IMG/VR virus record: IMGVR_UViG_3300030616_000016 | Span: 124,001 to 188,000 of that record | Reading direction: 5' to 3' (one strand) | DNA: 64,000 nucleotides | In this document: one piece after another, positions 975 through 6,175 of the stretch | Layout: each line of letters starts with the position of its first letter | How positions within the stretch are numbered: the stretch's first letter is position 1 | Position numbers and translations under genes: made by a program | Notes under the pieces: generated by a model | Told to the model about the DNA's origin: nothing | Seen by the model: the letters and a program-made list of their open reading frames with translations, nothing else | Databases searched by the model: none

Positions 975-1307
975 TTAGTGTTGTGAGCCACAGCTTGAAC
1001 ACACGCGTGTATCTACTGAAACATCTCCCCCACAAAATTTGCATATAAAGTTCTTTGTATCTTTTATGTTTTTGACACTGCACGACTCACATACGTTACT
1101 ATATTTCGCTATTGTTTCTATATCTATGTTCTGTGGAACAAGGAATGCGACTATTTGTTCGTATTTCCCAGCAGTGTAGTAATCTTGACAGGTTATGCAA
1201 ACGCATTCCTCGATGAACTGATATACATCATACTTATATGTATCAGGGTCTACCCATTTTTTGATTTTAATTAAGTCTCCTTGTATGAACTTTAGGTATG
1301 TCCTCAT
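975..1307 (-). CDS. Accessory protein with C-terminal zinc ribbon
   Basis: Ends CKFCGGDVSVDTRVCSSCGSQH; GGAG SD upstream. Confidence 0.75.
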   Translation of the reverse strand: MRTYLKFIQGDLIKIKKWVDPDTYKYDVYQFIEECVCITCQDYYTAGKYEQIVAFLVPQNIDIETIAKYSNVCESCSVKNIKDTKNFICKFCGGDVSVDTRVCSSCGSQH

Positions 1308-1316
1308 CTGAATCTC

Positions 1317-1661
1317 CTAAATACTTGTCTCACATCCGCAGTTCTTACAAACACCTTTTTGTATTTCATCGCTGCCACAGAATTCACAAATTGCTAATTT
1401 CGCATATCTAATCGATTCGGATATTAAAAAATATTTTGAACCATTTGATACTATAAAGCAATCGGTAGGAAATAGTGCATCAACAGACTGTATGGTACAA
1501 ATTTTATCTCTTATTAAGTCTTCCACAAGTACATCAAATAGTTCTGTGCTTCTAATTCCTTTTGCATCAGTAAGTGTTGTTTTCATAGGATATGAACGAG
1601 GTATATCGAATACGATTTTTAGCTTATGTTTTATGGCATGCATTGCTTCTTCTATGGTCAT
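1317..1661 (-). CDS. Accessory protein with C-terminal zinc ribbon (start re-assigned to MTIEEAM)
   Basis: Ends CEFCGSDEIQKGVCKNCGCETSI. ATG 1661 has an AAGGA SD and removes the overlap with 1685-1891. Confidence 0.7.
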   Translation of the reverse strand: MTIEEAMHAIKHKLKIVFDIPRSYPMKTTLTDAKGIRSTELFDVLVEDLIRDKICTIQSVDALFPTDCFIVSNGSKYFLISESIRYAKLAICEFCGSDEIQKGVCKNCGCETSI

Positions 1662-1684
1662 AATATTATCCTTTGGAAATGATA

Positions 1685-1891
1685 TTAGGCAGCAAGCTTC
1701 CATACTCCAGCTGAGGCGCCTGCTAATGCCCATGTAGAAGAAATGCCCATATATGTCAATATACTTGCTCCTCCAAGAGTGGAGAGGCATAGCAATGAGA
1801 ATCCTTTCCAGTGATTAGCTATTCCTAAAAAGAAATTTTTTGCTGATGACACGAATGAGTTTGTAGTTCTTGTAATAAAGTCTTTCATCAA
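1685..1891 (-). CDS. Small membrane protein
   Basis: Two hydrophobic Gly/Ala-rich segments; GAGG SD. Confidence 0.55.
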   Translation of the reverse strand: MMKDFITRTTNSFVSSAKNFFLGIANHWKGFSLLCLSTLGGASILTYMGISSTWALAGASAGVWKLAA

Positions 1892-1915
1892 TATACCTCT
1901 GATAAAATGTTAGTT

Positions 1916-2104
1916 TTAGTAATTTGCTATCTGACATAGTGTCACTGCAATAAGAGTTGTTACGACTATGGCGAAGCTTATTGACGCAAGTGAGCCGCAT
2001 CCCATTAGATTTGTAAAGAAATATATGGCCGCGCCGCATCCTCCTCCAATAGCTCCATTCATAAACTTCTGCATTTTTGTTAGTTTTCTTTTGTTATCGT
2101 ACAT
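1916..2104 (-). CDS. Small two-TM membrane protein (start MYDNKRK)
   Basis: AGGAG SD before ATG 2104; two hydrophobic helices. Confidence 0.6.
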   Translation of the reverse strand: MYDNKRKLTKMQKFMNGAIGGGCGAAIYFFTNLMGCGSLASISFAIVVTTLIAVTLCQIANY

Positions 2105-2114
2105 GTTGGTTCTC

Positions 2115-2426
2115 CTAAGTATTAGTTTCACATCCACAATTGCAGCATACTTCATCTTGAATCTCCTTACTGCCACAAAATTGACATTGTATTTCATAAG
2201 GAATTATATATCCTTCATCTACCCAGCGTCTGAGAGTAGTTGCTGTAATTGCGCTCCAGTTACTGCCACACCCTATTTCATTTAGATTACAATCTAGTCC
2301 AATCAGATAAAATGCAGCATCGCAAACGGAATGACGTTCTACTCTGAATATTTGTCCTGAATTGCGCTCAATTTTATCTGTCCATTGCCATAGCTCACCA
2401 ACTTGTGGCATTCTTGTTTCACTCAT
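2115..2426 (-). CDS. Accessory protein with C-terminal zinc ribbon
   Basis: N-terminal PQVGELW (SH3/KOW-like start); ends CQFCGSKEIQDEVCCNCGCETNT. Confidence 0.75.
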   Translation of the reverse strand: MSETRMPQVGELWQWTDKIERNSGQIFRVERHSVCDAAFYLIGLDCNLNEIGCGSNWSAITATTLRRWVDEGYIIPYEIQCQFCGSKEIQDEVCCNCGCETNT

Positions 2427-2598
2427 TTCTCCTCCTTAGATGACAGTGCGCAATATATGCCATATCTGCTATTACTCCTGCAAATAGTGAATTTGAGAAG
2501 TCGGCGCCAAGTGCCTTCATAAGAGAAAACATGATAAGTCCAATAACTGTTGCTATAAGAATTTCCTTACTAGCATTATATGTTTCTTTAGAGCTCAT
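2419..2598 (-). CDS. 59-aa membrane protein (below ORF-track cutoff)
   Basis: MSSKETYNASKEILIATVIGLIMFSLMKALGADFSNSLFAGVIADMAYIAHCHLRRRNE*; AGGAG SD; stop overlaps the next gene. Confidence 0.6.
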   Translation of the reverse strand: MSSKETYNASKEILIATVIGLIMFSLMKALGADFSNSLFAGVIADMAYIAHCHLRRRNE

Positions 2599-2633
2599 TA
2601 TTATATCTCCTATTATTTGCTATGCATTTCTTG

Positions 2634-2904
2634 TCAAAAGTTGCCAAAAACGTGTGCGTGCTTCTTGTTCCCATGCTATACGCCGGTCTTTTACGTCAGG
2701 GCCATCGCATTACACGTCTCAGATTTGTTCTGAGTGCGGCAAAAATGTCAAGAAATCGTTGTCCGCAAGAACCCACATATGCTCCTGCGGATTCGTTGCG
2801 AATCGAGATCACAACGCAGCGTTGAATATTTTGCGACTCGGGATGGAGTCGCTTGCAGCTTCGACTGCATAGATGCTCGGCAATTCATTGCCGAGAGCAT
2901 TCAC
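2634..2904 (+). mobile_element. tnpB: Internally deleted IS200/IS605-family element: 3' end of tnpB plus right-end hairpin
   Basis: YTSQICSECG...KSLSARTHICSCGFVANRDHNAALNILRLG* (2711-2872) matches the TnpB Zn finger/RuvC-III. Perfect hairpin CTCGGCAAT-TC-ATTGCCGAG (2876-2895), end TTCAC (2900-2904), no target duplication. Left boundary approximate. Confidence 0.8.
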
Positions 2905-3316
2905 TTTTGCGTTCTTCTATAGGCATTTCTGAATTGCAGCCGCAATTTAAACATACATCCTTAATCTCATTATGCCCGCAGAATTTGCATATGGCAATAG
3001 ACAGCTCACGTGGCTCGATAATTATATAGATATCTGATGTCCATTCTAAGATAACAAAGTCTATCTTCTCTCCATCATAACCCGTTTCTTTATAGACTCT
3101 TGCTATCTTCAATGGTTCGTGGTCTGCGCACTCAAGTGAGATACATAATAGCACGCCTTCTTCATCTACAATATAGCGTTCTTTATTATGTATTACATTT
3201 TGAGCCTTAAGCGCGGCAGGATTAAATGCATACCATGCATAATTATCATTAGGATCAACTATAACCATAACCTTTAGTCCATTCTTGTAGCACTGCCTTA
3301 CTTCTTTCAGTTTCAT
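2885..3316 (-). CDS. Accessory protein with C-terminal zinc ribbon; last codons supplied by the IS remnant
   Basis: CKFCGHNEIKDVCLNCGC; N-terminus similar to 11886-12305; stop lies inside the IS hairpin. Confidence 0.75.
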   Translation of the reverse strand: MKLKEVRQCYKNGLKVMVIVDPNDNYAWYAFNPAALKAQNVIHNKERYIVDEEGVLLCISLECADHEPLKIARVYKETGYDGEKIDFVILEWTSDIYIIIEPRELSIAICKFCGHNEIKDVCLNCGCNSEMPIEERKSECSRQ

Positions 3317-3346
3317 TATTTTTTCTCCAATATGGATTCACTTGTT

Positions 3347-3643
3347 CTAACTATCAATCGTAAAATCTATTGGATGGTGTATAGTATCGCCTCCTGGTTG
3401 TACTTTTGTGTCTTCTCTACTTTGTTGGTCTGTAAATTCGACATTGACCCATTTAAGAAAACGCATTGGCTCATATGTAAAATCACTAAATGACATTAAC
3501 TCCTGTGCCTCTTGAACTACTGTTACTCGTTCCAGCCATCGTGTTTCTTTAATGTTATTCTTACATATGGTTACTGGCAATAATGCAAACCATGATTTTA
3601 CACGTCTATTGCCTTCTTTCATTTCTTTCTTTTGGAATCTCAC
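3347..3643 (-). CDS. Hypothetical phage protein
   Basis: SWFALLPVTI...RWLERV pattern seen in small phage ORFs; GGAG SD. Confidence 0.55.
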   Translation of the reverse strand: MRFQKKEMKEGNRRVKSWFALLPVTICKNNIKETRWLERVTVVQEAQELMSFSDFTYEPMRFLKWVNVEFTDQQSREDTKVQPGGDTIHHPIDFTIDS

Positions 3644-3645
3644 GC

Positions 3646-3999
3646 TTAATCTCCTCTCATTTCCTCAAGTAGGATATTCAGTGCTTCCCTAGCACGGTCT
3701 GTAAGCCATTGTTGGTCACATGACATACGTAATAATGTGCATTTCATCGGCTTTTCTTCGCTATACATCCATTCAATAAGCTCCTCTGCTTGCTCCCTGT
3801 CTGCAACCTCGACAGTCAGGTAAACAATTTTCTTTCTTGTAAGCATATCTACTATGCCGTTAAAAGTTTTCTCTGCTTGTTCAGGGTTCATCTGTATCAC
3901 CGCCTTTCTTTGCCATAATCGATCTCCTATAGCGTTAATATAACAACTGTAGCGTATCCCCTTACATCTCCTTTCAATATACGATACCGTTAATGTCAA
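3646..3999 (-). CDS. Hypothetical protein
   Basis: Co-oriented, tightly packed ORF. Confidence 0.55.
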   Translation of the reverse strand: MTLTVSYIERRCKGIRYSCYINAIGDRLWQRKAVIQMNPEQAEKTFNGIVDMLTRKKIVYLTVEVADREQAEELIEWMYSEEKPMKCTLLRMSCDQQWLTDRAREALNILLEEMRGD

Positions 4000-4204
4000 A
4001 TTCTTCTATCTTATTTTCTACAGGCCCGATTTTATTACCTAATATGATTCCAGCTGCAAAACATTTTGCACATATAATACCTACATCCAAGTTACCTTGT
4101 GATCCATGTAGCTTGGAATAATTACTTTGATTTATTTCATGATGTGTTATTGTTAATCTTGATTTGCCTTCAGTTCTAACTAAATAAACATATGTTTTAT
4201 TCAT
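3974..4204 (-). CDS. Hypothetical protein
   Basis: Co-oriented ORF with AAGGA SD. Confidence 0.55.
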   Translation of the reverse strand: MNKTYVYLVRTEGKSRLTITHHEINQSNYSKLHGSQGNLDVGIICAKCFAAGIILGNKIGPVENKIEEFDINGIVY

Positions 4205-4229
4205 TGCTTATTCCTTTCATATTTTGGCA

Positions 4230-4607
4230 TTACAAAAGCATTGCGATTTCTTGAATAATAAATAGTTTGGGAGCAACGCATATTTTAACTAAGCATATTG
4301 TATTACAAATTATAAATGGTATAGAAACCAATCCGCAAGTAATTCCTGCTACCCAATAAAACACTTCTTTATTATCGCAAGAATCAAACTCCTTGGTAAT
4401 CAAGCAGTAAAAACAATAAATAGCTGTTGTCAATAATATAATGCCTGCTGTAACTCCAATTATAGACAACCAGAAATTATACCTTAGGAGCTGATTGACT
4501 ATATCTGGAGCCTGAGAAATAGCAAAATCCTTGGTTTTGACTATTGATTCCAGAATTTCCTTGACTAACGACATTGATTCTTTCTCCATATTAAATTTCC
4601 TTTCCAA
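4230..4607 (-). CDS. Two-TM membrane protein
   Basis: Two long hydrophobic segments. Confidence 0.65.
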   Translation of the reverse strand: MERKFNMEKESMSLVKEILESIVKTKDFAISQAPDIVNQLLRYNFWLSIIGVTAGIILLTTAIYCFYCLITKEFDSCDNKEVFYWVAGITCGLVSIPFIICNTICLVKICVAPKLFIIQEIAMLL

Positions 4608-4633
4608 TAAGGGTTAAATTGGCCTAATTCTTT

Positions 4634-4963
4634 TCACGATTGTTCACTTCCGCAGTTTGTGCATGTAGTACCACTAAGATTTGTATAGCCACAATATTTA
4701 CAACTGGCTGTTTCTACAACACTACTGTATGTCCAATAGTATCCTCCTGCAGATATGCATACCAATAAGTATTCGTCTATCTTTGATGCACTTGTTTTTA
4801 TAGTATCAATTATAAATGGAATGTTAAGCGGCGGCTGCATGGTCTCAGATAAGGAGTAATGGTCGTGCTGTGTTCCAAAACTTGGATATTCATTAGGTGT
4901 ATGCCTTCTAATAACACACTTGGTTTTATTCTCCTTGGCTATTTGAAGCTCTTGAATTGTCAT
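4634..4963 (-). CDS. Accessory protein with C-terminal zinc ribbon (HYS..QPP subfamily)
   Basis: HYSLSETMQPPLNIPF and YSSVVETASCKYCG...CTNCGSEQ; close to 12302-12622. Confidence 0.75.
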   Translation of the reverse strand: MTIQELQIAKENKTKCVIRRHTPNEYPSFGTQHDHYSLSETMQPPLNIPFIIDTIKTSASKIDEYLLVCISAGGYYWTYSSVVETASCKYCGYTNLSGTTCTNCGSEQS

Positions 4964-5036
4964 TTGATATTATCCTAACCATGGTAATATTCTTCAAGTT
5001 CTTCTACGAACTCATGCAATTCTTTAAAGACTGTTT

Positions 5037-5300
5037 CTACGCATTTGAGACTATGCCATCCGGCTTCTTTCCACTTTTGCAATTTCCTCTGTTGTAATAT
5101 CCACTGTTGTTTTTCTCATCTACAGCCACTTTAATATCCTCCTTTGACAGATTTTTAACAAGTTTTATTTTATTTGTACACGCCTTATCCGAACATACTA
5201 TACGGTCATTGTCAAATCCACATCCGTACACTGGCAACATGATTTCACCACAAATATCACACTTGATCTGCACCTCAATAGCCCTTATAAATTGGTTCAT
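5037..5300 (-). CDS. Cys-rich hypothetical protein (3' region possibly frameshifted)
   Basis: CDIC...CSDKAC; starts at an ATGA junction. Confidence 0.5.
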   Translation of the reverse strand: MNQFIRAIEVQIKCDICGEIMLPVYGCGFDNDRIVCSDKACTNKIKLVKNLSKEDIKVAVDEKNNSGYYNRGNCKSGKKPDGIVSNA

Positions 5301-5713: not shown

Positions 5714-6175
5714 CTATTGCTCTGATCCCACCACCTCAAACCACCGACACCGATATTTATTTCCAGCTTGATGAATTTCAGATAATTTAGTTCGTACTTT
5801 AATAATCTCTACCTTATTGACACTGTATTCTTTCGCATGTCGCAAAGTGGGCCATAAATATAAGCCGGGATGACATTCTGTGGTGCATACTGAGAAAAAA
5901 TCAGCCGAGTAAAACCGACCATCTCTATATTTATCAATATGCCCAGCTTCCCGAGTTCGATAACCAATAGCATAACCTTCGTCAATTTCGGGCCAGTCCG
6001 TTGGCGTGTTTAATGTCGCGTTCGGATCTAAAACGGTGTTCGACAAATTGGCTCCGGACAGATTAGCTCCGGACAGGTTGGCTCTGTACAGATTAGCTCC
6101 GGACAAATAGGCTCCGGACAAAGATGTCCCTTCGATCTCTTTTAACAATATTCCATCTTTATTTTTGATTTTCAT
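5714..6175 (-). CDS. Pentapeptide-repeat protein
   Basis: GTSLS GAYLS GANLY RANLS GANLS GANLS, then a Cys/His domain. Confidence 0.75.
   Translation of the reverse strand: MKIKNKDGILLKEIEGTSLSGAYLSGANLYRANLSGANLSGANLSNTVLDPNATLNTPTDWPEIDEGYAIGYRTREAGHIDKYRDGRFYSADFFSVCTTECHPGLYLWPTLRHAKEYSVNKVEIIKVRTKLSEIHQAGNKYRCRWFEVVGSEQ

What the first reader, a model, noticed from the sequence alone, without database searches (positions are those of the whole stretch)
2634..2924. Miniature IS200/IS605 derivative keeping just the part that encodes the TnpB guide-RNA scaffold
Seen: ~270 bp, antisense to the operon, holding only the last ~55 tnpB codons, the right-end hairpin and TTCAC, inserted in the last codons of a zinc-ribbon gene (a plausible empty site restores EERKTRNA*). 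Known: TnpB omega/reRNA derives from the tnpB 3' end and right end, with the guide taken from the adjacent flank; non-autonomous IS200/IS605 derivatives exist. Inference: a protein-less omegaRNA locus whose guide would be TTTTGCGTTCTTCTATAGGC (2905-2924), usable in trans by a host or phage TnpB to cut empty-site competitor genomes.
Basis: partly seen in the sequence, partly recalled or inferred. Interest (0 to 1): 0.6.

Follow-up and report, generated by a model that had tools for sequence, protein, structure and literature searches.

The report
Truncated TnpB transposon remnant in phage
A 231-kb marine-sediment phage carries the last ~200-270 bp of an IS605-family transposon, meaning the tail of its tnpB gene plus the right end that together encode the TnpB guide-RNA scaffold; the piece has lost its left end, so it is most likely an immobile relic, and use as a guide RNA is possible but unproven.

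Summary
Window 2699-2869 (+) encodes the last 57 codons of a TnpB (Pfam PF07282, E 8e-13). It is followed by the stop codon, a perfect 8-bp right-end hairpin (2876-2895) and the terminal motif TTCAC (2900-2904).

The piece is a 49% GC island in a 38% GC phage. It supplies the last six codons and the stop of a phage zinc-ribbon gene.

About 40 relatives share the same right end, and three helices covary across them. A covariance model of that scaffold matches window 2781-2904 end to end (119.8 bits; the window was one of its 22 training rows). The guide-RNA scaffold therefore looks complete.

- The element is not a mobilisable miniature IS. A left-end model finds nothing here, and 2634-2698 matches neither a left end nor tnpB.
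- The family's target motif (TTTAT, or TTAA in the closest subclade) is absent from the left flank, so the proposed empty site is unsupported.
- The phage's own intact TnpB, outside the window, is a different lineage. No tnpA, clear promoter, RNA data or second copy was found.

Protein-less elements that encode guide RNAs are already described.

Verdict: an ordinary transposon remnant. An orphan-guide function stays possible but is untested.

The parts
2634..2698 (+). GC-rich stretch of unassigned origin between the phage flank and the recognisable tnpB tail. It is not a left end and is not significantly tnpB-like.
   Evidence: GC rises at about 2625-2634. No significant DNA similarity to the homologous tnpB region of the closest subclade or to left ends. 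The protein alignment breaks down upstream of PSHYTSQ.
2699..2869 (+). Last 57 codons of a tnpB gene: the zinc-finger/TNB domain and the third RuvC motif region (RDHNAALNI). The frame is open. The N-terminal ~320 codons are missing.
   Evidence: PF07282 E 8.1e-13. 70-80% amino-acid identity to the L011/L100/L110/L108/L140 subclade. tblastn coordinates.
2870..2872 (+). tnpB stop codon TAG, inside the family's conserved TAGA(A/T)GC motif.
   Evidence: Alignments.
2787..2790 (+). GCGG, the 5' strand of a conserved long-range helix that pairs with TCAC at 2901-2904. Three of four pairs form here, with one C-A mismatch.
   Evidence: RNAalifold on 22 family members. The helix is invariant across the family and so carries no covariation.
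2833..2852 (+). Scaffold stem-loop: GCGACTC, loop GGGATG, GAGTCGC (7 perfect pairs).
   Evidence: Five of its seven pairs show compensatory changes across the family; 98.7% of cells are paired.
2854..2869 (+). Scaffold stem-loop: TGCAG, loop CTTCGA, CTGCA.
   Evidence: All three modelled pairs covary.
2876..2895 (+). Right-end subterminal hairpin: CTCGGCAA, loop TTCA, TTGCCGAG. It would serve as the TnpA recognition hairpin on DNA and as the last scaffold stem in the RNA.
   Evidence: Relatives have a hairpin at the same place with different but complementary arms.
2900..2904 (+). TTCAC, the transposon-encoded motif at the right-end cleavage site and the last bases of the element.
   Evidence: GAGCA(T/G)TCAC ends every family member, and the flanks diverge immediately after it. 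The same TEM, TTCAC, is reported for ISGst2 (bioRxiv 10.1101/2023.03.14.532601).
2781..2904 (+). Full-length match to the covariance model of the family's omegaRNA-type scaffold.
   Evidence: 119.8 bits, model positions 1-124 of 124, not truncated. Caveat: the window was one of the 22 training rows.
2905..2924 (+). Flank that would form the guide if a plus-strand omegaRNA is made. It is phage coding sequence, antisense to the zinc-ribbon gene.
   Evidence: Position follows the family rule. The 12-20-mers are unique in the 231-kb genome. No function shown.
2885..3316 (-). Phage zinc-ribbon gene (143 aa). Its last six codons (SECSRQ) and its stop codon come from the transposon's right end.
   Evidence: ORF list and paralogues ending in C..CG...C.NCG(C/S). 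Only itself found in the 5.8-billion-protein search.
2419..2598 (-). Next phage gene downstream on the minus strand (59 aa). Its ribosome-binding site lies at about 2606-2611, which limits how far left the foreign DNA can extend.

Best explanation
An IS605-family element inserted on the plus strand into the 3' end of a phage zinc-ribbon gene. It belongs to a TnpB clade whose right end finishes ...GGGGAGCATTCAC, the same TEM as ISGst2, and which is abundant in marine-sediment Desulfobacteraceae genomes. A later deletion removed the left end, any tnpA and about 320 codons of tnpB. About 206 bp of recognisable element remain (2699-2904), with 65 bp of unidentifiable GC-rich DNA to the left.

Shown: the remnant cannot be excised or moved by a TnpA because it has no left-end hairpin. 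It encodes no nuclease. It still contains the complete conserved scaffold of the family's guide RNA.

Inferred: it is most likely a decaying relic. Its only demonstrable present effect is to give the phage gene a new six-residue tail and stop codon. It could make a working guide RNA only if the plus strand is transcribed and a cognate TnpB from the same subclade is supplied by the host.
For: - Identity as a tnpB tail plus right end.
- Foreign composition.
- No left end: the left-end model R2 finds its positive control at 57.9 bits and even the phage's distant full-length element at 18.2 bits. In the window it finds nothing with default filters. With filters off it finds nothing above 2.4 bits on the plus strand at 2300-3000.
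- Single copy and no tnpA in the phage.
- Similar remnants are common. Truncated 3' copies occur in metagenomes, other phage contigs and Desulfobacteraceae genomes (L184, L181, L193, L199, L202), and the closest relative L011 is itself internally deleted. The same phage holds a second, unrelated TnpB tail remnant.
- The family is expanded in Desulfobacteraceae genomes from sediments: 47 and 5 scaffold matches in two genomes. The phage sample is a marine sediment metagenome.
Against: - The 57 codons are still in frame without stops, and every scaffold helix is intact. This could reflect constraint rather than youth.
- Two independent TnpB tails of about 270-295 bp in one phage, both starting near TnpB residue ~300 of ~375, is more order than random deletion predicts. 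With only two cases, and a broad spread of break points elsewhere (-88 to -366 nt), this is weak.
- Absence of expression was not shown. No RNA data exist for this phage.
Confidence: 0.6

Rival explanations
1. Functional orphan guide-RNA gene used with a host TnpB. The plus strand is transcribed. A host-encoded TnpB of the same subclade binds and processes the scaffold and uses 2905-2920 as guide. It then cuts phage genomes that carry the uninterrupted allele next to the family's target motif, and repair from this phage copies the module. The result would be homing or competition during co-infection.
For: The scaffold is complete and all covarying helices form. The family is abundant in plausible host lineages, which could supply TnpB. 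The literature notes that protein-less PATE elements often encode omegaRNAs that must be served in trans. Another large-phage contig carries a full TnpB of this right-end family together with mini elements.
Against: No promoter above chance on the plus strand: 4 sites found against 2.6 expected. The family promoter that follows the left end in full and mini elements is missing. No RNA evidence. The target motif is not at the proposed empty site. No uninterrupted allele was found anywhere. Nearest known copies are only about 72-73% identical in DNA.
Confidence: 0.2
2. The phage's own intact TnpB (outside the window, genome 92.4-93.7 kb) uses this scaffold, and that of the second remnant, as extra guides. 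This would make one nuclease with several dispersed guide genes.
For: The phage TnpB ORF is uninterrupted (405 codons; PF01385 and PF07282). It shares the general right-end layout: stop codon, GAAGCCCC hairpin...TCAC.
Against: It is only 32-39% identical to this family, and 35% to the fragment. Its own scaffold region scores 22 bits on the family model and has a 75-nt replacement of the covarying stem-loop. The second remnant scores 23.5 bits. These are three different lineages.
Confidence: 0.04
3. The remnant has been co-opted by the phage in a way unrelated to TnpB. Options are the new C-terminal tail and stop for the zinc-ribbon gene, a spacer or structured element in the minus-strand operon mRNA, or a small zinc-finger peptide from the 113-codon plus-strand ORF 2531-2872.
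For: The zinc-ribbon ORF does end inside the right-end hairpin loop. The plus-strand ORF is open for 113 codons.
Against: A six-residue tail needs about 20 bp, not 270. No terminator-like site on the minus strand inside the element. The plus-strand ORF starts in antisense phage sequence, and no start signal was examined in support.
Confidence: 0.1
4. A complete, mobilisable miniature element (PATE) with both ends that a TnpA could excise and move.
For: Such LE+RE mini elements of this very family exist elsewhere (L094, L142, L144, L139, L148/L177, L187).
Against: No left-end match. The 9-nt identity to the left junction of L100 is at chance level, 306 of 1000 shuffles. Single copy. No tnpA in the phage.
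Confidence: 0.03

Closest known systems
ISGst2-type IS605-family tnpB elements of Geobacillus stearothermophilus (Meers et al., bioRxiv 10.1101/2023.03.14.532601)
   Same: The right end finishes with the same transposon-encoded motif, TTCAC. The omegaRNA is encoded by the tnpB 3' end plus the right end, with the guide taken from the flank. Most family members here have TTTAT/TTTAC a few bases before the left-end stem, like the ISGst2 TAM TTTAT.
   Different: The window copy has no left end, no TAM and no nuclease gene. The subclade closest to it seems to use (C/A)TTAA instead of TTTAT. Sequence relatedness to ISGst2 itself was not tested because no ISGst2 sequence was on hand.
PATE-like protein-less IS200/IS605 derivatives that encode omegaRNAs served in trans
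   Same: It has no protein and retains the right end and the scaffold-encoding region. Any use would need a TnpB encoded elsewhere.
   Different: PATEs keep both palindromic ends and are multi-copy and mobilisable. This one lacks the left end and is single copy. Many PATEs of this family keep only model positions 51-124, whereas this copy keeps the whole core.
ISDra2 TnpB-omegaRNA (reRNA) system
   Same: The general architecture: scaffold overlapping the tnpB 3' end, a helix joining the scaffold's last bases to an upstream segment, and a guide immediately 3' of the right end. This comparison is from my own knowledge of the published structures and was not tested here.
   Different: Different clade, TAM and scaffold sequence. 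No structural or biochemical data exist for this family.
Ordinary truncated IS remnants in phage and bacterial genomes
   Same: One-sided deletion, loss of the transposase or nuclease, foreign GC content, a single copy, and a neighbouring gene that reads into the remnant.
   Different: What remains happens to be a complete non-coding RNA module, which leaves a residual chance of function.

Membership tests
IS200/IS605 family (IS605-group tnpB element) | TnpB coding sequence with the C-terminal zinc-finger/TNB domain | tested here: met
   PF07282 E 8.1e-13. Only the last 57 codons are present.
IS200/IS605 family (IS605-group tnpB element) | Right-end subterminal hairpin followed by a conserved cleavage motif | tested here: met
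   Hairpin 2876-2895 and GAGCATTCAC 2895-2904, aligned with about 40 relatives.
IS200/IS605 family (IS605-group tnpB element) | Left-end hairpin preceded by the target-adjacent motif | tested here: not met
   Left-end model R2: no hit in 64 kb, and at most 2.4 bits on the plus strand at 2300-3000 with filters off. No TTTAT or TTAA in the left flank.
IS200/IS605 family (IS605-group tnpB element) | A Y1 transposase TnpA available in cis or in the same genome | tested here: not met
   PF01797 has no match in the 231-kb phage record. Host genome unknown.
PATE / miniature non-autonomous IS200/IS605 element | Both ends retained around a short, protein-less core | tested here: not met
   Only the right end is present. 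Compare true mini elements of the family.
PATE / miniature non-autonomous IS200/IS605 element | Several copies at different sites | tested here: not met
   One copy in the genome. No other copy of this hairpin in IMG/VR apart from a chance hit.
TnpB omegaRNA gene | Scaffold sequence and secondary structure conserved with covariation, ending at the right-end boundary | tested here: met
   94.3% of cells paired against 75.2% in shuffles; 13 of 20 pairs with compensatory changes; slid controls 38-55%. The window matches the full model at 119.8 bits (it was a training member).
TnpB omegaRNA gene | Transcribed on the element's strand and ending about 16-20 nt into the flank | not testable with these tools
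   No RNA run holds the locus. Only a 9-of-12 promoter-like site at 2587-2616, at chance level.
TnpB omegaRNA gene | A cognate TnpB present to bind it | tested here: not met
   In the phage genome the only intact TnpB is 32-39% identical to the family and has a different scaffold. A host source is possible, but the host is unknown.
TnpB omegaRNA gene | The guide's target exists next to the family TAM (an uninterrupted allele) | tested here: inconclusive
   No other match in the phage, in IMG/VR or among proteins. Laid contigs did not resolve the site.

The most novel reading that the evidence does not exclude
The jumbo phage keeps orphan guide-RNA modules as weapons or homing loci. There are two: this one and a second TnpB tail at genome 112.6 kb, both about 270-295 bp and both starting near the same TnpB residue. 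Each would be transcribed and loaded onto a TnpB, either host-encoded or the phage's own. Each would direct cleavage of co-infecting relatives that carry the uninterrupted allele. That would be a dispersed, CRISPR-array-like use of transposon remnants by a virus.
Probability: 0.08. Interest if true: 0.7.

Novelty: new member of a known kind. Interest (0 to 1): 0.3.

Why it matters
If it is only a relic, its value is for annotation. It shows that IS605-family elements of sediment bacteria invade jumbo phages and decay there, it hints at a Desulfobacteraceae-type host, and it explains the odd C-terminus of one phage gene. If the retained scaffold is used, it would be a natural case of a virus exploiting a guide RNA without its nuclease. 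That bears on how dispersed TnpB guides could have evolved into guide arrays. Separately, the family alignment and models built here define a TnpB clade with a compact covarying scaffold and probable TAMs.

Tried and rejected
- GenBank phages: no DNA match to the element, and only a pentapeptide-repeat match for the first 8 kb.
- Exact search for the right-end hairpin in IMG/VR: one hit, a chance match inside a GC-rich repeat protein gene.
- Rfam: only a sub-threshold hit to Ysr276 (12.6 bits against a gathering score of 100, E 0.81) over 2777-2904. Not taken as evidence.
- Relatives of the interrupted zinc-ribbon gene, to find an empty site: one weak zinc-ribbon match in IMG/VR, only the protein itself in the large protein collection, and no exact match to the flank in IMG/VR.
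- Laid contigs of two marine-sediment runs. The source-like run covers the left junction (2507-2815) without differences. Coverage of the right junction is fragmentary. No joint skipping the element was listed. One X1 contig appears to share only 2595-2634 and diverge on both sides, with its right break exactly at 2634. The diverging letters match nothing in the phage and are not clearly homologous to 2905 onward. I count this as inconclusive.
- A 29-nt tandem duplication as an explanation for 2634-2698: alignment score equal to the shuffle mean.
- tnpB homology of 2612-2698 to the closest subclade: not significant.
- A 9-nt identity (TATTATTTG) to the target/left-end junction of L100: chance level.
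- Whole-element RNA fold: z-score -1.2, uninformative.
- A regex-based census of left ends mislocated several of them. I used the alignment instead.

Full report
**Context.** The window is bases 124001-188000 of a 231,647-bp IMG/VR virus record (CheckV completeness 95%). It is the same contig as Ga0272442_10000021 (L159). The only public runs that hold the stretch are marine sediment metagenomes. The genome is 38% GC. Around the finding, all plausible genes lie on the minus strand. Several are small paralogues ending in a CxxCG...CxNCG(C/S) zinc ribbon.

**The observation.** The plus-strand frame that ends at TAG 2870-2872 carries the C-terminal zinc-finger/TNB domain of TnpB (PF07282, E 8.1e-13).
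- An exhaustive phmmer search found 2520 relatives. The best share 60-75% identity over about 55 residues, and many are full-length TnpBs of 350-410 aa.
- tblastn with those proteins places solid homology at 2702-2866.
- After the stop come a perfect 8-bp hairpin (2876-2895) and GAGCATTCAC (2895-2904).
- The stretch is a GC island, 49% against 38%.
- The minus-strand gene 2885-3316 reads across the junction at 2904/2905. It takes its last six codons and its stop, which lies in the hairpin loop, from the element.

**The family.** Relatives fetched from GTDB genomes, IMG/VR and JGI metagenomes define a clade. Its right end reads stop codon, GAAGCC, a hairpin of variable sequence, then GGGGAGCATTCAC, and the flanks diverge immediately after.
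- Full-length members encode TnpB of 375-405 aa.
- Some also carry a Y1 transposase gene upstream (L110, L140, L145).
- The fragment belongs to the L100/L110/L108/L140/L011 subclade, at 70-80% amino-acid identity.
- Its best genomic relatives are Desulfobacteraceae genomes. A scaffold model finds 47 and 5 copies in two of them, though they are only about 72-73% identical to the window copy in DNA. Cyanobacterial TnpBs are the next group.

**The scaffold.** An alignment of the last ~225 nt of 22 members gives a consensus with four helices: a 7-bp stem with loop GGGATG, a short second stem, the right-end hairpin, and a long-range 4-bp helix.
- The long-range helix joins the terminal TCAC to GUGG about 115 nt upstream in the window copy.
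- The three local helices covary strongly. Cells paired are 94.3%, against 75.2% in shuffles and 38-55% when partners are slid. Thirteen of 20 pairs show compensatory changes.
- The long-range helix is invariant, so it is neither supported nor contradicted.
- In the window all three local helices are perfect (2833-2852, 2854-2869, 2876-2895). The long-range helix forms three of four pairs (2787-2790 with 2901-2904).
- A covariance model of the last 124 positions matches 2781-2904 end to end at 119.8 bits. The window was a training row, but Desulfobacteraceae copies (three of four not in the training set) score about the same, 122-123 bits.

Whether the parental RNA starts further upstream than 2699 is unknown.

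**The left side.** In full-length and mini elements of this family the left end is easy to recognise. It has an extended stem around a hairpin that resembles the right-end hairpin, then GGGATGAAT, then a TTGAC...TATAAT promoter.
- The left-end alignment shows TTTAT or TTTAC 6-9 nt before the stem in most members. In the subclade closest to the window copy it shows CTTAA or ATTAA.
- Meers et al. report TAM TTTAT and TEM TTCAC for ISGst2, so this family behaves like that group.
- A covariance model of the left end recovers its control at 57.9 bits. It even picks up the distant left end of the phage's own full-length element at 18.2 bits. It finds nothing in the window, and nothing with filters off at 2300-3000.
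- Stretch 2634-2698 is GC-rich but not significantly similar to tnpB, to left ends or to itself.
- The left flank holds neither TTTAT nor TTAA.

The element is therefore a one-sided remnant, not a transposable miniature. The boundary at 2634 and the 'EERKTRNA*' empty site remain conjecture. A short extension to a stop after an arbitrary junction is unremarkable in AT-rich DNA.

**Partners.**
- The phage has no tnpA.
- Outside the window it has one intact tnpB element (genome about 92.4-93.7 kb) and a second TnpB tail remnant (112.6 kb).
- The three belong to different lineages. The intact TnpB is 32-39% identical to this family. Its scaffold region scores 22 bits with a 75-nt replacement of the covarying stem. 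The second remnant scores 23.5 bits.
- A cognate nuclease would therefore have to come from the host.
- No RNA run holds the locus.
- The only plus-strand promoter-like site upstream (2587-2616, 9 of 12) is at chance level.

**Population data.** Contigs of the probable source run cover 2507-2815 without differences. A second study holds a relative at about 85-95% identity over scattered pieces. No joint that removes the element was listed. One contig appears to share only 2595-2634, with its right break at 2634. This fits a junction there but is a single low-depth observation.

**Interpretation.** The best-supported reading is a relic of an IS605-family insertion, probably acquired from a sediment host. 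It lost its left part and is now immobile and protein-less. The intact frame and scaffold can be explained by youth.

The alternative is that the module is kept as an orphan guide RNA for a host TnpB. This is mechanistically reasonable and matches the published remark that PATE elements often encode omegaRNAs served in trans. Another large-phage contig carries a full TnpB of this family plus mini elements. Here, however, there is no promoter, no expression data, no target and no conservation evidence.

Two remnants of similar length in one phage is suggestive. But break points of other truncated copies range from about -88 to -366 nt, so I do not lean on it.

**Novelty.** Truncated IS605 copies and protein-less omegaRNA-bearing derivatives are both described. 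This is a new member of a known kind, in an uncommon setting (a jumbo phage of marine sediment).

Noticed in passing
outside the window: G000:C1 about 92.4-93.7 kb (L002 1368-2677, minus strand): An apparently intact tnpB-only element in the same phage. It has a 405-codon ORF with PF01385 and PF07282, a right end that finishes GGGGTAATGTCAC just where the next gene's ATG starts, and a weak left-end match just upstream of the ORF.
   Followed up: partly
outside the window: G000:C1 about 112.6 kb (L003 1501-1768, plus strand): A second TnpB C-terminal remnant of a different lineage. It is also antisense to its neighbours, also at most ~296 bp, and starts at about the same TnpB residue as the window copy.
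   Followed up: partly
outside the window: L003 1770-2000: Six or seven copies of GATTCAT(T), spaced 30-55 nt apart, in a non-coding stretch right after the second remnant. They could be iterons or regulatory repeats; unexplained.
   Followed up: no
window 975-5300, minus strand: A run of small paralogous genes (975-1307, 1317-1790, 2115-2426, 2885-3316, 4634-4963). All end in a CxxCG...CxNCG(C/S) zinc ribbon, and none tested has a Pfam family.
   Followed up: partly
window 5714-6175, minus strand: A pentapeptide-repeat protein. It is the only part of the first 8 kb with DNA similarity to GenBank phages (about 79%).
   Followed up: no
window 2595-2634: One contig of the probable source run appears to share only these 40 bases (start codon, ribosome-binding site and spacer of the 59-aa gene). 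It diverges on both sides, with the right break exactly at the proposed left boundary.
   Followed up: partly
L094/L201, L196, L199 (IMGVR_UViG_3300025162_000041) and L093/L095 (..._000043): Other large-phage contigs carry a full TnpB of the same right-end family, a short tail fragment and LE+RE mini elements. One contig has the mini element's right end at both termini, flagged as inverted terminal repeats.
   Followed up: partly
L010 (ENA k141_641749), bases 1-250: A TnpB tail of this family sits directly after what reads as a tRNA 3' end (...CCACCA). It is preceded by GAGCATTCG, which resembles a right-end terminus. This may be nested or tandem remnants.
   Followed up: no
L011 (Desulfobacteraceae genome, contig JAAEMK010000581.1): The closest relative of the window fragment is itself an internal-deletion derivative. 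TnpB residues 42-144 are joined to 316-394.
   Followed up: partly
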